A stretch of DNA of 63,785 nucleotides, filler included, from Ministeria vibrans ATCC 50519 (taxonomy: Eukaryota > Protista > Filasterea), in assembly GCA_943704425.1 (NCBI GenBank). It is 4 parts of 4 records of this genome, joined end to end, with 100 filler letters (N's around TTAATTAATTAA, not from the genome) between each part and the next. Parts side by side here need not be neighbours in the genome. Positions count along the whole stretch, not along the records: positions 46,978 to 53,667 come from CALSCP010002106.1; 3 more parts are not named here. The stretch is one strand, 5' to 3'. Positions 46,978 through 53,667 of this stretch are shown piece after piece. Under the pieces are notes generated by a model. It was not told the DNA's origin and made no database searches. It worked only from the letters and a program-made list of their open reading frames with translations. Both the position numbers and the translations under genes were made by a program. How positions within the stretch are numbered: position 1 is the stretch's first letter; each line of letters starts with the position of its first letter.

Positions 46978-47048
46978 ATGACAATGAGTGGAAAAAGAGG
47001 AAAGGGACGCAAGAGAGCACAGGCGCCGCCCCTTCCCCGCTGTCTCCA

Positions 47049-50000
47049 ATGCGCTGTTTGCTTCTGTGTTTGCTGGGCATTGCCTGCGCCCACGCCCTGC
47101 CCTACGCCGCCGACCCCTCATGCTCGGCCCCCCCACCAACATCTCCAACCCAGGTATGCTGCTCAAACAGCCGCTCGTGCTTTTTTTTTTTCCCGGGACT
47201 CTAAAAAAAAGAAGAAAAAAAAAAAGAAAAAAGAATCGTAACAACAACAAAAAACACTGACGCTTACCTCGTACGTGCTGACCTCCATACGCAAGACAAT
47301 ATGTATATCCACCCCGTAATATTCGTCATTGTGGCGCCACACGTGCGTGTCTCCACTGATTTCTTCCGTCTCGTTTATTCTTTCCGACGTCAATGTTAAA
47401 ACAAAATCGTGAAAAAATAAAGTTGACGTTAAATTGGCCTGCCTTGCTTCCCCACGCCTGTCCACGATAGGCGCTAGATAGCCGCACGAACCGGACCTTC
47501 ACCGGCGAGACGCTGGTGCTGAACGCAGGAGTTTACTCGAGCGCTTTTCTGCCGATTTTTCTCACGGGTGATGTCACACTTGAATGCGAGGCGGGCGTGC
47601 GCTTTGTCGGGTGCGGCACGACCGCGTCTGCCATTGTGGTGTCGGGCGCCAACAACATCGTGCGCAACTGCGGCGTGTTCGCTGCCTTTTCCGCCGTCCC
47701 CATCGATGTGTCCCCCCATGCTGCTCTCCACCTGTCCGACGCCCACTTCACCCAAAACCTCCCGGCCGCCGTTGCCTCAAGCCTCACCGCTGGCTTCGGC
47801 CAGCAGCTCGCATCCGATTCGCTGCGCGCCCCTTCCTACTTTCGGCAAAACAGCTCTTTTTTTGCTGGTGCGAGCTTTTCCGCCGCTCCCTCAAACCTTT
47901 TCGTTGGGGCCGGTGTTCTTCGTGCCCAGTCCATGGCCACAGTCGTTGTGGATCGTATCAGCGCCTCAGACTGTCTTGGTGCACCTGGCGCGCTTTTCTT
48001 TGTCGACTCGGGAGCCACTCTCAATGTGGCCGACTCCATCTTCAACAACACGCTCGGGTGGAATTCGGGCGTTGTCACAGTCGCCGCAGGCGCCTCTGCC
48101 TCACTCTCACATGTCAACACCACACACACGGTCGCCGTGAGCCTTGATAATGTTCCAAGTGCCGGCGTCGCCTTTGTTGGACGTCTGGGAACGGCGGGTA
48201 TGCCGAGCGCGACGGCCAGTCTCATCCTGAGCCACTGCAACATCTCCTTTGCCGCTGGCGCAAGCGCCGGTGTCCTTGACAGTGCCTCTCCTTCACATTG
48301 TACTATCACACAATCGACGCTCACTCAGTCGCAGAGTACAAGCGACGAAATCGACGACGGTGGCGCAGCAGGCGCGCTTCGCGTCGTCGGCCAAGAGGCT
48401 CAGCTCGTCGTCGACGATTCCATCTTTTCGCATAACTCCGCTCGCGAAGTTGGCGGCGCTATTGCGGCACTCTCTCGTGCCCACGCCACCGTGACTCGCT
48501 CCGTCTTCTCCGCCAACATTGCCAACATCTACGGTGGCGACATCTTTGCCTGTGCTGGCGCAAACGTCTCTCTCTCCGCTTGCGCCTTTAACGGCTCCTC
48601 CGCCTCCGTGGGCGGCTCGCTTTACGCCACTGGTCGCAAGGGCACCATTGTCGTTAGCGACAACTCCATCTTTGACTTTACCGTAGCAAAATTCGGCGGT
48701 GCCATTGGTTCGGCCGAGTCTGGCAGGGTCTTCGTCGATGGCGGCCAAATCTTGCACGCGTCAGCCTTTGGTGGTGGCGCCCTCTGGGCCGGCGGCCGAA
48801 GCTCCGTTCGCCTAACTGGCGTTGAAATTCGCGACTCTCGCAGCGAAATAGATGGTGGCGCAGCTCGTGTCGTCCAAGAATCAACGGTTCTCCTTGACGG
48901 CTGCGCCATCACCGGTAACTACGCGCCCCGTGGTGCCGCCGTGGCCGCCATTGGCTTGTCCAAACTGGACGTGCTCAACTCAGACGTCACCTTTAATCGT
49001 GCCTCCTACTCGGGTGGCGTCGTGTATTCGGACAATCTTGCCGTCGTCACCTTCGATCACTGCCACCTCGACGACAACGTCGCTGTCATTGAGGGTGGTG
49101 GCGTCGCCGCACTTCAGTCCGCCAGCACCGTTAACCTTCTGCACTCTTCGGCGATACGCAACGCCTCCCCGCGTGGCGGTGTTGTCTTTCAGCGTCACTC
49201 GAGCACCTTTGTCATGCGCGAGTGCCGCCAAGTCATGTTTAATCGTGCCGTTATTGGGAACAACACCCTCTCGGGCGACGGCGGCATTGCTTATGTCGAG
49301 GAGCAGGCCTTTGAGAACGACCTCACGCGCACCGTCGCTAACGGCATTAGCCATCCAAAGGTGATGCGACGTGACGTAGATGCGGCCATCATTGCGACTG
49401 TCGGTGCTGCCGGCGTCGATGGTCTTTACACCGAGCCTGACCATAGCATTTTGGGGACGCCGCAGGCGGTTGCCAAGCTTAACATGCCCTTCCATGACTT
49501 CCCCAAGTCGTGGTATATCAACACGACCATTCTGAACTGCACCGCTGCCCGCGACGGCGGCTTCTTTAAGGGCTACGACACCAACTTTTACCTGAAAAAC
49601 AGCACCATTGTGTACGTTGTGGCGGGACGCGACGGCGGAGTCATTTGGGATCAGTTTGTCAAGTTCAACACCTCCGAGGGTTTCCGCCAGGACGACCTCG
49701 ACCCGCTTGCACCCGAAGAGCCCTATGCCAACCTCATCTACCGCGAATGCGACGTGCACCACTGCACCGCTGGCGGTCGTGGCGGCTCGCTTCACATCAA
49801 CCAGTTGCCCATTGACGAGATGGCGGGCCGATTCTACATCAACAGCAACAGCTACAGCTACCAGATGATCGCCAACGTGGGGGGTCTTTTCTACGCCTCC
49901 GACGTGAGTCAGGTCGAGTTTAGCGAAGCGCAGTTTTATCACCTGCTCAACGTTTACGCACAGTATACGCCACCACCACCACCGGGTAGTTTCTTGTCAC

Positions 50001-53000
50001 ATGCCGTCGAGTGGGGCGACGAGTTTGCCACGAGCGAATTCAAGCTGTGCATGCCCTTCACGTGGGGAGTTCAGGGCGACACCGCCTGCTCGTTGGTTCC
50101 CTCCTTCACTGTGTACTCGGGCGAACTGTTGCAGGCGGTCATGCCTCCTGTGCAGCTCATTGATGTCGCCGGTACCATTGTGACCACCTCCTTTGACCGA
50201 TACGCTCTCGAGATTGGCGCGTGTCAGACCAACCCGCGCACCCAGTCACCGGGCGAGGCGCCCGTTGTCTTTGGACGCGAATCCATTGTGACGGGCACCA
50301 TGGAGAAGGGTCAAGGCAGTGTCAGCGGCGTGACGGTGTATGGTGAGCCGGGACAATACTGTGTGCACGCACGCGACACAAGCATTTCCAATATGATCCC
50401 GTTTCAGTTTAATGTGACCATTGTCGAGTGTTCCAGGGACGACCGCGTCATCTATTATGACTTCCTCTCCCAGTACCCTGCGTGCAAGGCTCAAAGCGGA
50501 CCGCCTGAAGTTGAGAGCATTTTGAGTGTCTCTCTCGCTGTCCTTCTGCTGCTTGTCATGCTTGTGTCACTCTGCATCATCCAGTGGCGTCGCACTCACA
50601 AGGCGACGACAGTCGCCGGACGTCTCTACATGCTTTGTGTGTTGGCGGGTCTTTCGCTTGCTCTTGTCATTCCCCTTATGTGGCGTATTTCCGCCACCCG
50701 CGCCTCGTGCATTGGTGTCATCTGGGTGGGCCATCTGTCGTTTGTGTTCGTTTTTGCGCCCATGTGGGCCAAAGTGAGTCTCATGACGTTCCTGACGCTG
50801 ACGCAACGTCGCACCGTTCAGCTTACGGTGCCCAACGATAAGCTGCGCAACTACTTGAGCGTGTCGCTGGCGCTCGTGATCCCTTACCTTGTTTTCTGGA
50901 GCGCCATTGACGACATTGAGCCTCAACAGCTCGTCGACAGCAACGGTAGTGTCTACCAGCAGTGTGTTTACAGCTCGGGTTTCTCTATTGCCCTGCTCAT
51001 CTGTGAGGGTGTACTGCTGAGCAGTCTTTTTGTCCAGCTGTGGATGCGCCGTGCTATCACGACGCTTTACAATGAGAGCGCCCGCCTCAGCTACTGCTTT
51101 CTTGTTGTGGCCGTCTATGCGTGCACTCTCATGGCTATTTACTTTATCGTGTTGGAGAGCTACGCCGGCGGCGACGATATCCTCATCGATGCCTTTGTTA
51201 TTGGTGCCGTTCTTTCTGTGTGGCTCCTCGCCCTCTATCCCATTGTACAGCGCCTCTTGCGTCGCTCGTGGGAGAGCACTGGCAACGAAGTGTTTATCTC
51301 GTATGCCAGCACTGACAAGGTCTTTGTGAACAAGTTGCGCGACAGCCTCAGCAACGAAGGCTTTGGCGTGTACGTAGACTCGGAGCGCAGCGAAGCGGGC
51401 GCAGTCTGGCGTCATCAGGTCGCACAGGCGATTCAAGCTAGTCGGATTGTCATTTTCGTTGTCTCCCCAAAGTCGTATGCCTCTTCCTACTGCAAAGAGG
51501 AGCTCCAATTTGCCTTTGACGAGAAGAAGCATATTTTCCCGATTATTCGCCAAAAGGATTTTGGTGAGGGCAACGATCCAGGACTAGACAGTAAGGAGAA
51601 CAATTATGATGTAAAATATATTGTTACTTCGTGCATTTTTGTAACAATAGACGATGGCAGTATTATTATTTTAATTTATTATCAATATTAATTTTATTAA
51701 TTTTGTCTTTTTCTTTTCAGTGCTAATGAAGACGTATCATTGGGCGTTGTTTGACAACCCGTCGGAGTTCGAGCTCAACACGCAGAAGCTTTTGCGCACC
51801 ATTTTGTACACGCTGCAGAAACAGTCTCTGGAGTATGCAGTGGAGAACGTTGAGCACTATCGTCAGAGATACCGTCTGAAGTACGCCAACGCCGAAACTG
51901 AGCTCGCTGCCCACACCAGGTTTCAAGACGTAATAATAAGAACACCAGAAAATCCAATAATAATAATAATAATTAATAATAATTATTATTATCATCGTTT
52001 TTTTTAGTACTTTTTGTCGTGGTCGCATGACGACGCGGACTTTGTGAGGCACAGATTGTACGTGAACCTGTCTGACCGCAAGTGTGAGCCATGGGCCGAC
52101 TTTCTGGGTTTGCGTTCGGGCGACGACTGGCGCAGTGTCATTGGCGAGGCTATCTCGCACTGTAAAATTATGATTTATGTGCTCAGCAGCTCGTCTGTTA
52201 TCTCGCAATGTAAGAGAGAGAGAGAGAGTGAGTGAGAGAGAGAGTGAGAGAGAGAGAGAGTGAGTGTGTGTGTGTGTGCACTGACATTTTGCCGTGACTG
52301 ACATTTTGTCCTGTGGTGTAGACTGCCAAGAAGAATTGCTGTATGCGCTAGAGTGCAACAAGAAGATTGTGACGGTGCTCGTGGACGATGTGCAGGACAT
52401 TCTTGTGCATGGTGCGCCTGCTCTGGCCAACCTGTTGACGGGTTGGCCCGTCGTGGACATGCGCGACATGAATGACTACACAGAGAACCTGGCTCACCTT
52501 CTGCGTCTGTTGCGCAACAAAGAGTTCTTTGACAAGCAAGCGGCCATCGACAATAGGAAGGGTCCCTGGGTGGAATTGCGCGCTGCTCTTACGAACGCCG
52601 TAAACCGCAACCCACCGCAACTGTGCGCCATCAGCGCTGCACTCTCCGCGCGTGGTGCGGCAGCGCGTATGAATGGCACGTCAGATCAACGCGACAGTTT
52701 CCACTTGTCCAGAGCGACTCGCAGTGATGCGTCCACCACTGCTCTGGCGACTGGCTTCAGGGCTGACGAGGCAATTGAGATGTCGACACACGCAATCGAG
52801 ATTGACGAGGACGGTTCTGTGCCGATGAGTGCGGAGACCAGCACACACGAGAGCGAGGTATACGACAGCGGCAGCGGCTCCGGTAGCAGCAGGCGCGAGG
52901 ATACTCAAAGCGCCGCTTTATTACCTCTTCAACCACTGGACGCCGTGTGTATTGCTCTTCAGCACGTCGTCGTCGACGACAGTGACATGGATGACAATGT

Positions 53001-53082
53001 CGTCGACGACAGTGACATTGACGGCAGCGACACCGACGACGATGCCCAGTTCTCTCCCGACGTGGTCGAAACTGCCCTCTAA
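47049..53082 (+). CDS. Receptor: signal peptide, beta-helix (PMP/pectin-lyase-like) ectodomain, class C-type 7TM, TIR, TIR
   Basis: Exon 1 MRCLLLCLLGIACAHA. GGA(I/L/V) and FxxN repeats. Seven hydrophobic helices at about 50515-51245 with class-C motifs (C..W..HLSF.FVFAPMWAK, WS..D..P, YNESARL, ALYP). TIR1: VFISYASTD...SSYCKEELQFA. TIR2: VLLSWSHDD...SQ/YCQEELLYA. Confidence 0.85.
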
Positions 53083-53291
53083 ACTTCGTCTCTAGTATTT
53101 CCTTATCATATTTCACAGTTGTCACTGTAATAATGATCACCAAAGTAAAAGTAATAATAAAATTAATAATAATAATAATAAATTTAATTAATAATTACGA
53201 GGAGTAATTTTTATTTATATTAAATTAATAATATTAATTAATTGGGTTTGTGGTTCCTGATTGTTTGATCATTGATCATTCATTTTCTGTC

Positions 53292-53667
<376 letters not shown>

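What the first reader, a model, noticed from the sequence alone, without database searches (positions are those of the whole stretch)
47049..53082. Class C-like GPCR with a beta-helix ectodomain and two cytoplasmic TIR domains (candidate direct sensor-NADase receptor)
Seen: a signal peptide, about 900 aa of ectodomain with GGA(I/L/V)/FxxN repeats, seven TM helices with class C motifs, then TIR1 in the same large exon as the 7TM. The fusion therefore does not depend on a splice prediction. A second TIR follows across canonical introns. Both TIRs keep the Glu in C-x-E-E-L. Established: class C GPCRs normally use a Venus-flytrap ectodomain and signal through G proteins. TIR receptors (TLR, IL1R) are single-pass, and the equivalent Glu is catalytic in SARM1, plant and bacterial TIR NADases. 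Inference: an immune-like receptor in which ligand binding (possibly a bacterial glycan) and receptor dimerisation drive TIR assembly and NAD+ cleavage. I do not know this architecture from characterised proteins, but I cannot confirm it is undescribed.
Basis: partly seen in the sequence, partly recalled or inferred. Interest (0 to 1): 0.88.

Follow-up and report, generated by a model that had tools for sequence, protein, structure and literature searches.

The report
Seven-helix receptor fused to two TIRs
A marine eukaryote makes one messenger RNA for a surface receptor that joins a beta-helix outer domain and a glutamate-receptor-type seven-helix membrane core directly to two TIR immune-signalling domains, a conserved but undescribed design that could link sensing to NAD+ cleavage without G proteins.

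Summary
Window 47049-53082 (+) is one five-exon gene of 1798 codons. Spliced RNA contigs from separate studies carry it as a single transcript. They move one splice donor to 51590.

The protein has these parts, in order:
- a signal peptide;
- a roughly 1000-aa ectodomain whose core is a right-handed beta-helix (Vag8 passenger Z 28.8, pertactin Z 25.3);
- a full class C 7TM (Pfam 7tm_3, 57.5 bits; family profile against mGlu3, E 4e-12);
- about ten residues later, TIR1 (TIR_2, 6.6e-21);
- TIR2 across two further introns.

Both TIRs keep the Glu at the catalytic position (E1379, E1550).

The same four-module design occurs in two uncharacterised Capsaspora owczarzaki proteins and two metagenome fragments. 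Orthologous TIRs are more alike than the two TIRs within one protein, so the design is old. Nine of 12 strain variants are synonymous.

No paper I could search describes a 7TM-TIR fusion.

NAD+ cleavage, the ligand, dimerisation and G-protein coupling are untested. The Glu alone is weak evidence: only 4 of 29 protist TIRs carrying it made cADPR isomers in a 2026 preprint.

Verdict: a real, expressed member of an undescribed receptor family. The enzymatic mechanism is plausible but unproven.

The parts
47049..47153 (+). Exon 1: start codon and signal peptide (MRCLLLCLLGIACAHA|LP...), 35 codons, phase 0
   Evidence: Sequence. Hydrophobic segment at residues 1-22. Junction 47153|47471 seen in RNA contigs of X6, X10 and X19. 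No ATG lies between the contig 5' ends (about 47020-47039) and 47049.
47154..47470 (+). Intron 1 (317 nt, GT..AG, 42% GC, poly-A/G tract at 47203-47232)
   Evidence: The joint 'skips 317, GT..AG (cut +2)'; TRF; GC.
47471..51590 (+). Exon 2 (4120 nt): ectodomain, 7TM and the first ~100 residues of TIR1 in one uninterrupted reading frame
   Evidence: ORF 47516-51691. RNA contigs are continuous over it and spliced at 51590|51721.
47990..49903 (+). Right-handed parallel beta-helix core of the ectodomain, with GG[AS]x coils about 27 residues apart
   Evidence: Pfam Beta_helix 2.5e-11. Motif count 11 against 1.3 expected. AF2 model pLDDT 80-95 over residues ~300-610. VIA-align: Vag8 passenger 7akv_G Z 28.8 (rmsd 2.9, 402 aligned), phage Andhra tail 8egr_A Z 27.1, pertactin 2iou_H Z 25.3, model range 174-811.
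50051..50500 (+). Membrane-proximal ectodomain module conserved in the family (V[YF]G.PG.Y ... T[IM].EC just before TM1); fold unknown
   Evidence: Alignments A1 and A2. No Pfam hit. The AF2 model has pLDDT below 50 here.
50507..51268 (+). Seven-transmembrane domain of class C (glutamate-receptor) type, with an ECL2 beta-hairpin
   Evidence: Pfam 7tm_3 57.5 bits. Seven helices in the AF2 model. Family profile against mGlu3 E 3.8e-12 over the whole 7TM, with the TM3 and ECL2 Cys, TM3 Lys and the ICL3 'FNE' motif aligned. Foldseek top hits are all class C. VIA Z 11-12.4.
51290..51590 (+). TIR1, N-terminal two thirds (betaA to betaD). It starts about 10 residues after TM7, behind an invariant Ser-Trp. 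The Glu at the catalytic position is E1379 (codon 51500-51502)
   Evidence: TIR_2 6.6e-21. In the alignment to plant AtTIR 3jrn, SSYCKEEL matches SSWCLDEL. E370 of the alignment query is invariant in all five family members. Fold match to the MapSPARTA TIR Z 10.9 and the RRS1 TIR Z 10.8.
51591..51720 (+). Intron 2 (130 nt, 22% GC), inside TIR1
   Evidence: The joint 51590>51721, GT..AG, in all four runs laid.
51721..51929 (+). Exon 3: the end of TIR1 (to about 51825) and a short helical linker
   Evidence: RNA contigs. The family motif DPGL(D/E)ML(L/M)K runs across the junction exactly as in the Capsaspora proteins.
51930..52007 (+). Intron 3 (78 nt, 15% GC, (AAT)n)
   Evidence: Contig record positions leave exactly 2 nt for 52008-52009. 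TRF.
52008..52209 (+). Exon 4: TIR2, N-terminal half (YFLSWSHDD...)
   Evidence: TIR_2 1.6e-10. Resembles the bacterial TIRs PdTIR 3h16 and AbTir 7uxr. 44-50% identical to the Capsaspora TIR2s.
52210..52321 (+). Intron 4 (112 nt, (AG)n and (GT)n microsatellites)
   Evidence: Contig record positions leave exactly 4 nt for 52206-52209. TRF.
52322..53082 (+). Exon 5: the rest of TIR2 (to about 52530; Glu E1550, codon 52333-52335), then an acidic low-complexity tail of about 180 residues and the TAA stop
   Evidence: Sequence. SQYCQEELLYA is identical in both Capsaspora proteins. A 15-nt coding repeat lies at 52973-53040.
53083..53192 (+). 3' UTR (approximate end)
   Evidence: X6 record 17 extends 153 nt beyond 53039. 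It stops before the next gene's ATG at 53292.

Best explanation
Shown: the locus is one expressed gene for a 1798-aa type I, seven-pass receptor. An autotransporter- or tailspike-like beta-helix ectodomain sits outside the cell. A class C-type 7TM spans the membrane. Two complete TIR domains lie in the cytoplasm, and the first is tethered about 10 residues after TM7. The design is conserved in Capsaspora and in uncultured eukaryotes, and the gene is under purifying selection.

Inferred: the TIRs are the receptor's output. A polymeric extracellular ligand binds the beta-helix. This rearranges the 7TM protomers, as in class C dimers. Because the tether is so short, TIR1 and TIR2 of neighbouring chains are forced together. 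TIR assemblies of this bacterial/SARM1-like (TIR_2) type form composite active sites around the conserved Glu. The most likely consequence is therefore NAD+ cleavage, which would either produce an ADP-ribose-derived signal or deplete NAD+. On this reading the protein is a direct sensor-enzyme that bypasses G proteins, in the manner proposed for GPCR-bigrams.
For: - One spliced transcript in runs of four studies.
- Pfam 7tm_3, two TIR_2 and Beta_helix hits, all above their cut-offs.
- Class C hallmarks aligned to mGlu3, and class C structures as top fold matches.
- Beta-helix fold with Z up to 28.8.
- Linker of about 10 residues with an invariant Ser-Trp, and an invariant Glu in TIR1 in all five family members.
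- The Glu is also kept in TIR2 of the window protein, of both Capsaspora proteins and of L002.
- The TIR1 Glu aligns with the catalytic Glu position of plant TIRs.
- TIR1's nearest profiles are NAD+-processing defence TIRs: ThsB, TIR-pAgo and SAVED-TIR, E 1e-13 to 1e-9. Its fold matches the NAD+-bound SPARTA TIR.
- Orthologous TIRs are 33-50% identical against 23-36% for paralogous pairs.
- 9 of 12 strain variants are synonymous, against 24% expected, and no non-synonymous variant lies in the 7TM or the TIRs.
- A 2026 preprint argues that catalysis is the ancestral TIR function and finds active TIRs in four protist lineages.
Against: - No activity was measured.
- The Glu is also present in TLR1. 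In the broad screen only 4 of 29 Glu-bearing protist TIRs made a detectable cADPR isomer.
- The 7TM+TIR1 model has low confidence (mean pLDDT 59.8), so no active-site geometry can be read from it.
- The homodimer prediction gave no answer.
- The conserved class C microswitch residues would also fit ordinary G-protein coupling.
- The ligand is unknown. Few charged residues are conserved in the ectodomain.
Confidence: 0.5

Rival explanations
1. The TIRs are scaffolds. Receptor activation nucleates a TIR-TIR platform that recruits other TIR-domain or adaptor proteins, as in TLR/IL-1R signalling, without any catalysis.
For: TIR1 also aligns well with TLR1 TIR, which carries the same Glu. Most Glu-bearing protist TIRs tested elsewhere were inactive for cADPR isomers. 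Tandem and multi-TIR proteins are the closest TIR relatives, which fits homotypic assembly.
Against: The TIRs score much higher with TIR_2 (75.5 bits) than with the animal-type TIR profile (38.7 bits). They are closest to bacterial enzymatic TIRs. The Glu is invariant in both TIRs across all members. No partner could be examined because only 6.7 kb of this genome is available.
Confidence: 0.25
2. It is an ordinary G-protein-coupled class C receptor with an unusual ectodomain. The TIRs are accessory: they act in regulation, trafficking or clustering, not as the main output.
For: The full-length 7tm_3 match keeps the TM3 Lys, the ICL3 FNE motif and the TM3-ECL2 cysteines. Class C receptors with non-flytrap ectodomains and large cytoplasmic tails are known, such as GPR158/179.
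Against: The TM7 PKxY Lys is lost in this protein (Y-P-I-V-Q). TIR1 begins about 10 residues after TM7, where class C receptors normally carry the proximal C-tail. The two TIRs are the best-conserved parts of the family.
Confidence: 0.17
3. It is an artefact: a mis-assembly, a read-through of two neighbouring genes, or a decaying pseudogene.
For: None was found.
Against: Single spliced contigs span all exons in independent runs. The frame is open for 1798 codons. The same domain order occurs in Capsaspora and in L002. Strain variation is mostly synonymous.
Confidence: 0.02

Closest known systems
Capsaspora owczarzaki CAOG_08484 (KJE89761.1 / XP_011270066.1, 1897 aa) and CAOG_08660 (XP_011270271.1, 2102 aa)
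   Same: The module order is the same: signal peptide, beta-helix ectodomain (Pfam Beta_helix hit in CAOG_08484 only), 7tm_3, TIR, TIR. Identity over 7TM+TIR1 is 26-30%. They share the motifs SW after TM7, YC.xE.QFA, DPGL(D/E)ML and SQYCQEELLYA.
   Different: They are annotated only as hypothetical or 'TIR domain-containing' proteins, and no searchable paper mentions them. Their TIR1-TIR2 linkers and tails are longer. They keep the TM7 PK(I/M)(Y/H) motif that the window protein has lost. Their genes are broken by many more introns.
Class C (glutamate-family) GPCRs: mGluR, GABA-B, CaSR, GPR158/179
   Same: The 7TM sequence profile, the TM3-ECL2 cysteines, the TM3 Lys, the ICL3 FNE(A/S) motif, an ECL2 hairpin and a large ectodomain.
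   Different: There is no Venus flytrap (ANF_receptor) and no NCD3G domain; a beta-helix takes their place. TIR domains replace the usual C-tail. G-protein coupling and dimerisation are unknown.
GPCR-bigrams (GPCR-PIPK such as Dictyostelium RpkA, GPCR-AC, -PDE, -INPP, -TKL; choanoflagellate GPCR-TKL/K)
   Same: An N-terminal 7TM and a C-terminal, presumably catalytic, effector domain in one polypeptide. The same question arises of direct receptor-to-enzyme coupling.
   Different: TIR is not among the described accessory domains. The 7TM here is class C with a large ectodomain, and the effector is duplicated.
TIR NADases activated by induced proximity: SARM1, plant TNL resistosomes (RPP1, ROQ1), bacterial ThsB, AbTir, SPARTA
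   Same: TIR_2-type sequence, a Glu at the catalytic position, and the fold. A receptor dimer would bring four TIRs together, the number present in a TNL resistosome (inference).
   Different: Those sensors are soluble or single-pass proteins with ARM, NB-LRR, pAgo or SIR2 partners. None is fused to a 7TM receptor. Activity is not shown here.
Autotransporter passenger and Pmp-type beta-helices, and phage tailspikes
   Same: The right-handed beta-helix with GG[AS]x coils. Best structural matches are Vag8, pertactin and phage tail proteins.
   Different: There is no beta-barrel translocator. The Chlam_PMP profile is below its cut-off (10.4 against 20.6 bits). No lyase or hydrolase catalytic signature was identified. 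The domain is anchored to a eukaryotic 7TM.

Membership tests
Class C GPCR (Pfam 7tm_3) | Full-length match to the 7tm_3 profile above the gathering score | tested here: met
   57.5 bits against a cut-off of 33.5, profile positions 8-245 of 251. Family profile against mGlu3 E 3.8e-12.
Class C GPCR (Pfam 7tm_3) | Seven TM helices, N-terminus outside, C-terminus inside | tested here: met
   Signal peptide plus seven hydrophobic segments, with Arg/Lys-rich loops after TM1, TM3, TM5 and TM7. Seven helices in the AF2 model. This is prediction only.
Class C GPCR (Pfam 7tm_3) | Conserved TM3-ECL2 cysteine pair, TM3 Lys and ICL3/TM6 'FNEAK' Glu | tested here: met
   K127, C191, R220 and the TLYNES motif align with mGlu3 K, C and NFNEAK.
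Class C GPCR (Pfam 7tm_3) | TM7 PKxY motif | tested here: not met
   The window protein has Y-P-I-V-Q, so the Lys is lost. The Capsaspora paralogues have PKMH and PKIY.
Class C GPCR (Pfam 7tm_3) | Venus-flytrap (ANF_receptor) ectodomain with NCD3G cysteine-rich domain | tested here: not met
   No such Pfam hit even at E up to 10; Beta_helix is found instead. This feature is not universal in the class (GPR158, GPR156).
Class C GPCR (Pfam 7tm_3) | Structural similarity to solved class C 7TM domains | tested here: met
   Foldseek top hits are GABA-B, GPR158, mGlu and CaSR. VIA Z 11-12.4 over about 210 residues. The model has low confidence (pLDDT 59.8), and Z below 13 is not decisive for helical bundles.
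Class C GPCR (Pfam 7tm_3) | Obligate dimer; coupling to heterotrimeric G proteins | not testable with these tools
   The homodimer job gave no answer.
TIR domain (Pfam TIR_2) | Profile match above the gathering score, and a complete domain | tested here: met
   TIR1 75.5 bits and the TIR2 N-terminal half 41.9 bits, against a cut-off of 28. The C-terminal parts on exons 3 and 5 align with the Capsaspora TIRs.
TIR domain (Pfam TIR_2) | Flavodoxin-like alternating beta/alpha fold | tested here: met
   betaA to betaD with alphaA to alphaC in the model. MapSPARTA TIR Z 10.9 and RRS1 TIR Z 10.8. Tested for the exon-2 part of TIR1 only.
Enzymatic (NAD+-cleaving) TIRs | Glu at the catalytic position of helix alphaC | tested here: met
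   E1379 aligns with the Glu of SSWCLDEL in AtTIR. It is invariant in the family. E1550 lies in the identical motif of TIR2.
Enzymatic (NAD+-cleaving) TIRs | Measured NAD+ consumption or cADPR/ADPR-type product, dependent on the Glu | not testable with these tools
   This needs expression and LC-MS. The prior from one screen is low (4 of 29 protist TIRs).
TLR / IL-1R type TIR receptors | Single-pass membrane protein with an LRR or Ig ectodomain | tested here: not met
   Seven TM helices and a beta-helix ectodomain; no LRR or Ig hit.
GPCR-bigram | 7TM domain followed by a catalytic accessory domain in one polypeptide | tested here: inconclusive
   The fusion is shown. Whether the TIRs are catalytic is untested. 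TIR is not among the listed types PIPK, INPP, AC, PDE and TKL.
Chlamydial Pmp / autotransporter passenger repeats | Chlam_PMP repeat profile and a C-terminal beta-barrel | tested here: not met
   Chlam_PMP scores 10.4 bits against a cut-off of 20.6. There is no barrel. Only the beta-helix fold and the GG[AS]x motif are shared.

The most novel reading that the evidence does not exclude
This would be an ancient eukaryotic receptor-enzyme. A class C 7TM dimer, on binding an extracellular polymer through its beta-helix, directly assembles four cytoplasmic TIRs into an NADase. The NADase makes an NAD+-derived second messenger or triggers NAD+ collapse. That would be a G-protein-independent 7TM signalling route. 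It would also link surface recognition and TIR catalysis in a design separate from TLRs.
Probability: 0.35. Interest if true: 0.9.

Novelty: new variant of a known kind. Interest (0 to 1): 0.76.

Why it matters
TIR domains are known on single-pass receptors (TLR, IL-1R) and on soluble sensors (SARM1, plant TNLs, bacterial defence systems). Seven-helix receptors fused to enzymes are known for kinases, cyclases and lipid kinases. A 7TM receptor wired directly to tandem TIRs joins the two worlds, and I found no description of it.

Three points make it worth following:
- The TIR sits about 10 residues behind TM7, so the protein is a natural test of whether 7TM rearrangement can drive an effector by proximity alone.
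- Capsaspora, a tractable close relative of animals, carries two copies, so the question is open to experiment.
- If the TIRs are active, the family would show how surface sensing and NAD+-based immune chemistry were coupled in unicellular eukaryotes.

Tried and rejected
- Splice donor: I first placed the exon-2 donor at 51563. RNA contigs showed 51590.
- Word-index protein searches found no 7TM+TIR relative: the window's 7TM+TIR1, the same region of Capsaspora P0157 (itself only) and alignment A3 (nothing, not even its own members). These are limits of the tool, not evidence of absence.
- Metagenome scans with a degenerate family motif and with an exact 40-mer of the window found nothing.
- ESM Atlas gave no usable hit.
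- The homodimer prediction for 7TM+TIR1 gave no answer, neither for nor against.
- Foldseek on the whole ectodomain gave only weak rows, none at E of 0.001 or below. VIA-align then gave clear beta-helix matches.
- Rfam found no RNA family in the piece.
- The organism could not be identified because run and organism names are coded. Near-identical copies occur under six organism labels and in algae and marine metagenomes. No protein of this genome appears in either protein library.
- Literature: no paper contains 'GPCR-TIR' or the Capsaspora accessions. The GPCR surveys and the TIR survey that I opened do not mention such a fusion.
- Supplementary tables that might list the Capsaspora architectures are not held as text.
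- The joined (spliced) protein was not given to any search, fold or complex tool. All such calls used single exons by reference. Exons were concatenated only inside scripts, to check the frame, hydropathy, motif counts and variant effects.
- TIR2, and the complete TIR1, were therefore never folded as whole domains.

Full report
**The gene**

The piece 46978-53667 carries one long ORF (47516-51691, 1391 aa). Shorter ORFs lie in register downstream.

Reading the sequence gave a five-exon model. I then tested it against public runs. Twenty runs from ten studies hold the stretch.

Contigs of four RNA-type runs were laid on 47040-53039. One contig of 5517 nt (X6) and one of 4789 nt (X10) cover the gene with all introns removed. 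A polyA RNA-seq run (X18) and X19 show the intron-2 joint.

The RNA moved one boundary: exon 2 ends at 51590, not at the 51563 I had first chosen.

The final model is:
- exon 1: 47049-47153
- exon 2: 47471-51590
- exon 3: 51721-51929
- exon 4: 52008-52209
- exon 5: 52322-53082

It has 1798 codons, no internal stop and GT..AG at all four introns. The transcript contigs begin 10-29 nt before the ATG and end near 53192, so the neighbouring gene is separate.

Coding sequence is 57% GC (GC3 68%). Introns are 15-48% GC and full of microsatellites.

**The domains**

Pfam hits on the large ORF:

| Family | E-value | Bits (cut-off) | Note |
|---|---|---|---|
| Beta_helix | 1.5e-10 | – | ectodomain |
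| 7tm_3 | 2.2e-15 | 57.5 (33.5) | nearly the whole profile |
| TIR_2 | 6.6e-21 | 75.5 (28) | TIR1 |
| TIR_2 (exon 4) | 1.6e-10 | 41.9 (28) | TIR2, N-terminal half |

Hydropathy shows a signal-like N-terminus and seven membrane segments. Basic residues follow TM1, TM3, TM5 and TM7. The ectodomain has 14 N-x-S/T sites. The TIRs are therefore predicted to be cytoplasmic.

TIR1 starts about ten residues after TM7, behind a Ser-Trp that is invariant in the family. Intron 2 cuts TIR1 after DPGLD. Exon 3 supplies the rest of TIR1 and a short linker. Exons 4 and 5 encode TIR2 and an acidic tail.

**The 7TM is class C**

A profile of the family hits mGlu3 at E 3.8e-12 across all seven helices. GABA-B, mGlu1/2/5/7, CaSR and GPR158/179 follow.

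That alignment matches these class C features:
- the ICL1 motif
- the TM3 and ECL2 cysteines
- the TM3 Lys
- the TM4 Trp
- the ICL3 'FNE' motif (TLYNES here)
- the TM7 Pro

The TM7 Lys of PKxY is replaced by Ile in this protein. Capsaspora has PKMH and PKIY at that motif, so the Lys is kept.

The AF2 model of 7TM+TIR1 has low confidence (pLDDT 59.8). It still shows seven helices, an ECL2 hairpin and a TIR. Its best structural matches are class C receptors (Z 11-12.4). Those Z values alone would not be decisive for a helical bundle.

**The ectodomain**

The motif GG[AGSV][ILVAM] occurs 11 times against 1.3 expected, about 27 residues apart. The Chlam_PMP profile is below its cut-off.

The AF2 model is confident (pLDDT 80-95) for about 300 residues of regular three-stranded coils.

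An unbiased structural scan gives:
- Vag8 autotransporter passenger: Z 28.8, 402 residues aligned, rmsd 2.9
- a phage tail protein: Z 27.1
- pertactin: Z 25.3
- a cyanophage tailspike: Z 24.1
- alginate epimerases and lyases: Z 18-20

So the fold is an adhesin- or tailspike-type right-handed beta-helix. Few charged residues are conserved with Capsaspora. I see no sign of an enzyme site, but I did not test for one. A conserved membrane-proximal module (V[YF]G.PG.Y ... .EC) has no recognised fold.

**The family**

An exhaustive HMMER search of 1.84 billion representatives with 7TM+TIR1 gave 12,129 hits. Nearly all of the best 150 are multi-TIR proteins (the two examined also carry WD40 repeats).

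Only four representatives match across both the 7TM and the TIR:
- two Capsaspora owczarzaki proteins, CAOG_08484 and CAOG_08660
- two metagenome fragments, P0008 and P0070

One Capsaspora protein scores Beta_helix + 7tm_3 + two TIR_2, and the other 7tm_3 + two TIR_2.

The contig of P0070 (L002) also encodes 7TM, TIR1 and TIR2 split by introns. Both of its TIRs carry YCLEE.

Identities over 7TM+TIR1 are 24-36% among all members. TIR1 is 33-46% identical to its Capsaspora counterparts and TIR2 is 44-50%. TIR1 against TIR2 is 23-36%. The tandem TIR, and hence the whole design, therefore predates the split of these lineages.

Among strains, 9 of 12 variants are synonymous against 24% expected. 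The three replacements lie in the ectodomain and the tail.

**How it may work**

The fusion, its expression and its conservation are shown. What follows is inferred.

The TIRs are of the TIR_2 type:
- TIR1 scores best against defence TIRs that process NAD+: ThsB, TIR-pAgo and SAVED-TIR.
- By sequence, both resemble bacterial AbTir and PdTIR.
- TIR1's fold matches the NAD+-bound SPARTA TIR.

E1379 aligns with the catalytic-position Glu of plant TIRs and is invariant in the family. E1550 sits in an identical motif.

From established knowledge of SARM1, plant TNLs and bacterial TIRs, such domains become active when brought together. The short TM7 tether and the expected class C dimer would bring four TIRs together. 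I therefore rank a proximity-driven NADase output first.

The caveats are real:
- TLR1 has the same Glu.
- A 2026 preprint found cADPR isomers for only 4 of 29 Glu-bearing protist TIRs, although it argues that catalysis is ancestral.
- The homodimer prediction gave no answer.

Scaffold signalling and ordinary G-protein coupling remain live rivals.

**Comparison and novelty**

The closest kinds are:
- class C GPCRs, which share the 7TM but not the ectodomain or the tail;
- GPCR-bigrams, which have a 7TM plus a C-terminal enzyme. The listed types are PIPK, INPP, AC, PDE and TKL, with no TIR;
- proximity-activated TIR NADases, none of which is on a 7TM.

No paper contains 'GPCR-TIR' or the Capsaspora accessions. 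The 2014 and 2025 GPCR surveys of animal relatives never mention TIR, and the 2020 TIR survey never mentions GPCRs.

The architecture is thus present in databases but undescribed. I rate it a new variant of known kinds.

**Limits**

The organism is hidden by coded names, and its proteins are absent from the libraries. Only 6.7 kb of this genome is available.

The spliced protein was not submitted to any search or fold tool. Exon-wise references were used instead. Exons were joined only inside scripts, for frame and composition checks. Complete TIR1 and TIR2 were therefore not modelled.

Noticed in passing
window 53292-53411 and 53481-53558 (+): A second gene starts 210 nt after the stop codon. 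Its second exon (IAFYFSDAALQKDRFLMRCIEDDAEG) matches the Pfam La domain (E 6.3e-07, partial, below the cut-off). It is cut off by the end of the piece inside an intron.
   Followed up: partly
window 53563-53667; 52213-52278; 51956-51991; 47203-47232: The introns are AT-rich and loaded with microsatellites: (AG)52 in the La gene's intron, (AG)26 plus (GT)9 in intron 4, (AAT)9 in intron 3, and an A-rich tract in intron 1. The metagenome relative L002 also has (CA)n in its TIR1 intron.
   Followed up: no
window 52973-53040: A 15-nt coding repeat (4.5 copies) encodes the acidic DDSD(M/I)D tail. The tails of the Capsaspora proteins are also long and of low complexity but cannot be aligned with it.
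   Followed up: no
window 48037-52962 (12 positions): Strain or population variants between runs. Nine are synonymous and three are replacements (T315A, Q461H, Q1759H). None of the replacements lies in the 7TM or the TIRs.
   Followed up: yes
P0007, P0009 and many others: The closest TIR relatives are giant proteins with three to seven tandem TIR_2 domains followed by WD40 propellers. They score higher than the true 7TM-TIR relatives because of the repeated TIRs.
   Followed up: partly
L003, L004 (Capsaspora loci): The Capsaspora orthologues are broken by many introns, also within the 7TM region. In the window gene a single 4.1-kb exon holds the ectodomain, the 7TM and most of TIR1.
   Followed up: partly
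runs X1-X20: Near-identical copies of this gene are filed under six different coded organism labels and in 'algae' and 'marine' metagenomes. The source may therefore be a widespread marine protist or a frequent associate of algal cultures.
   Followed up: no
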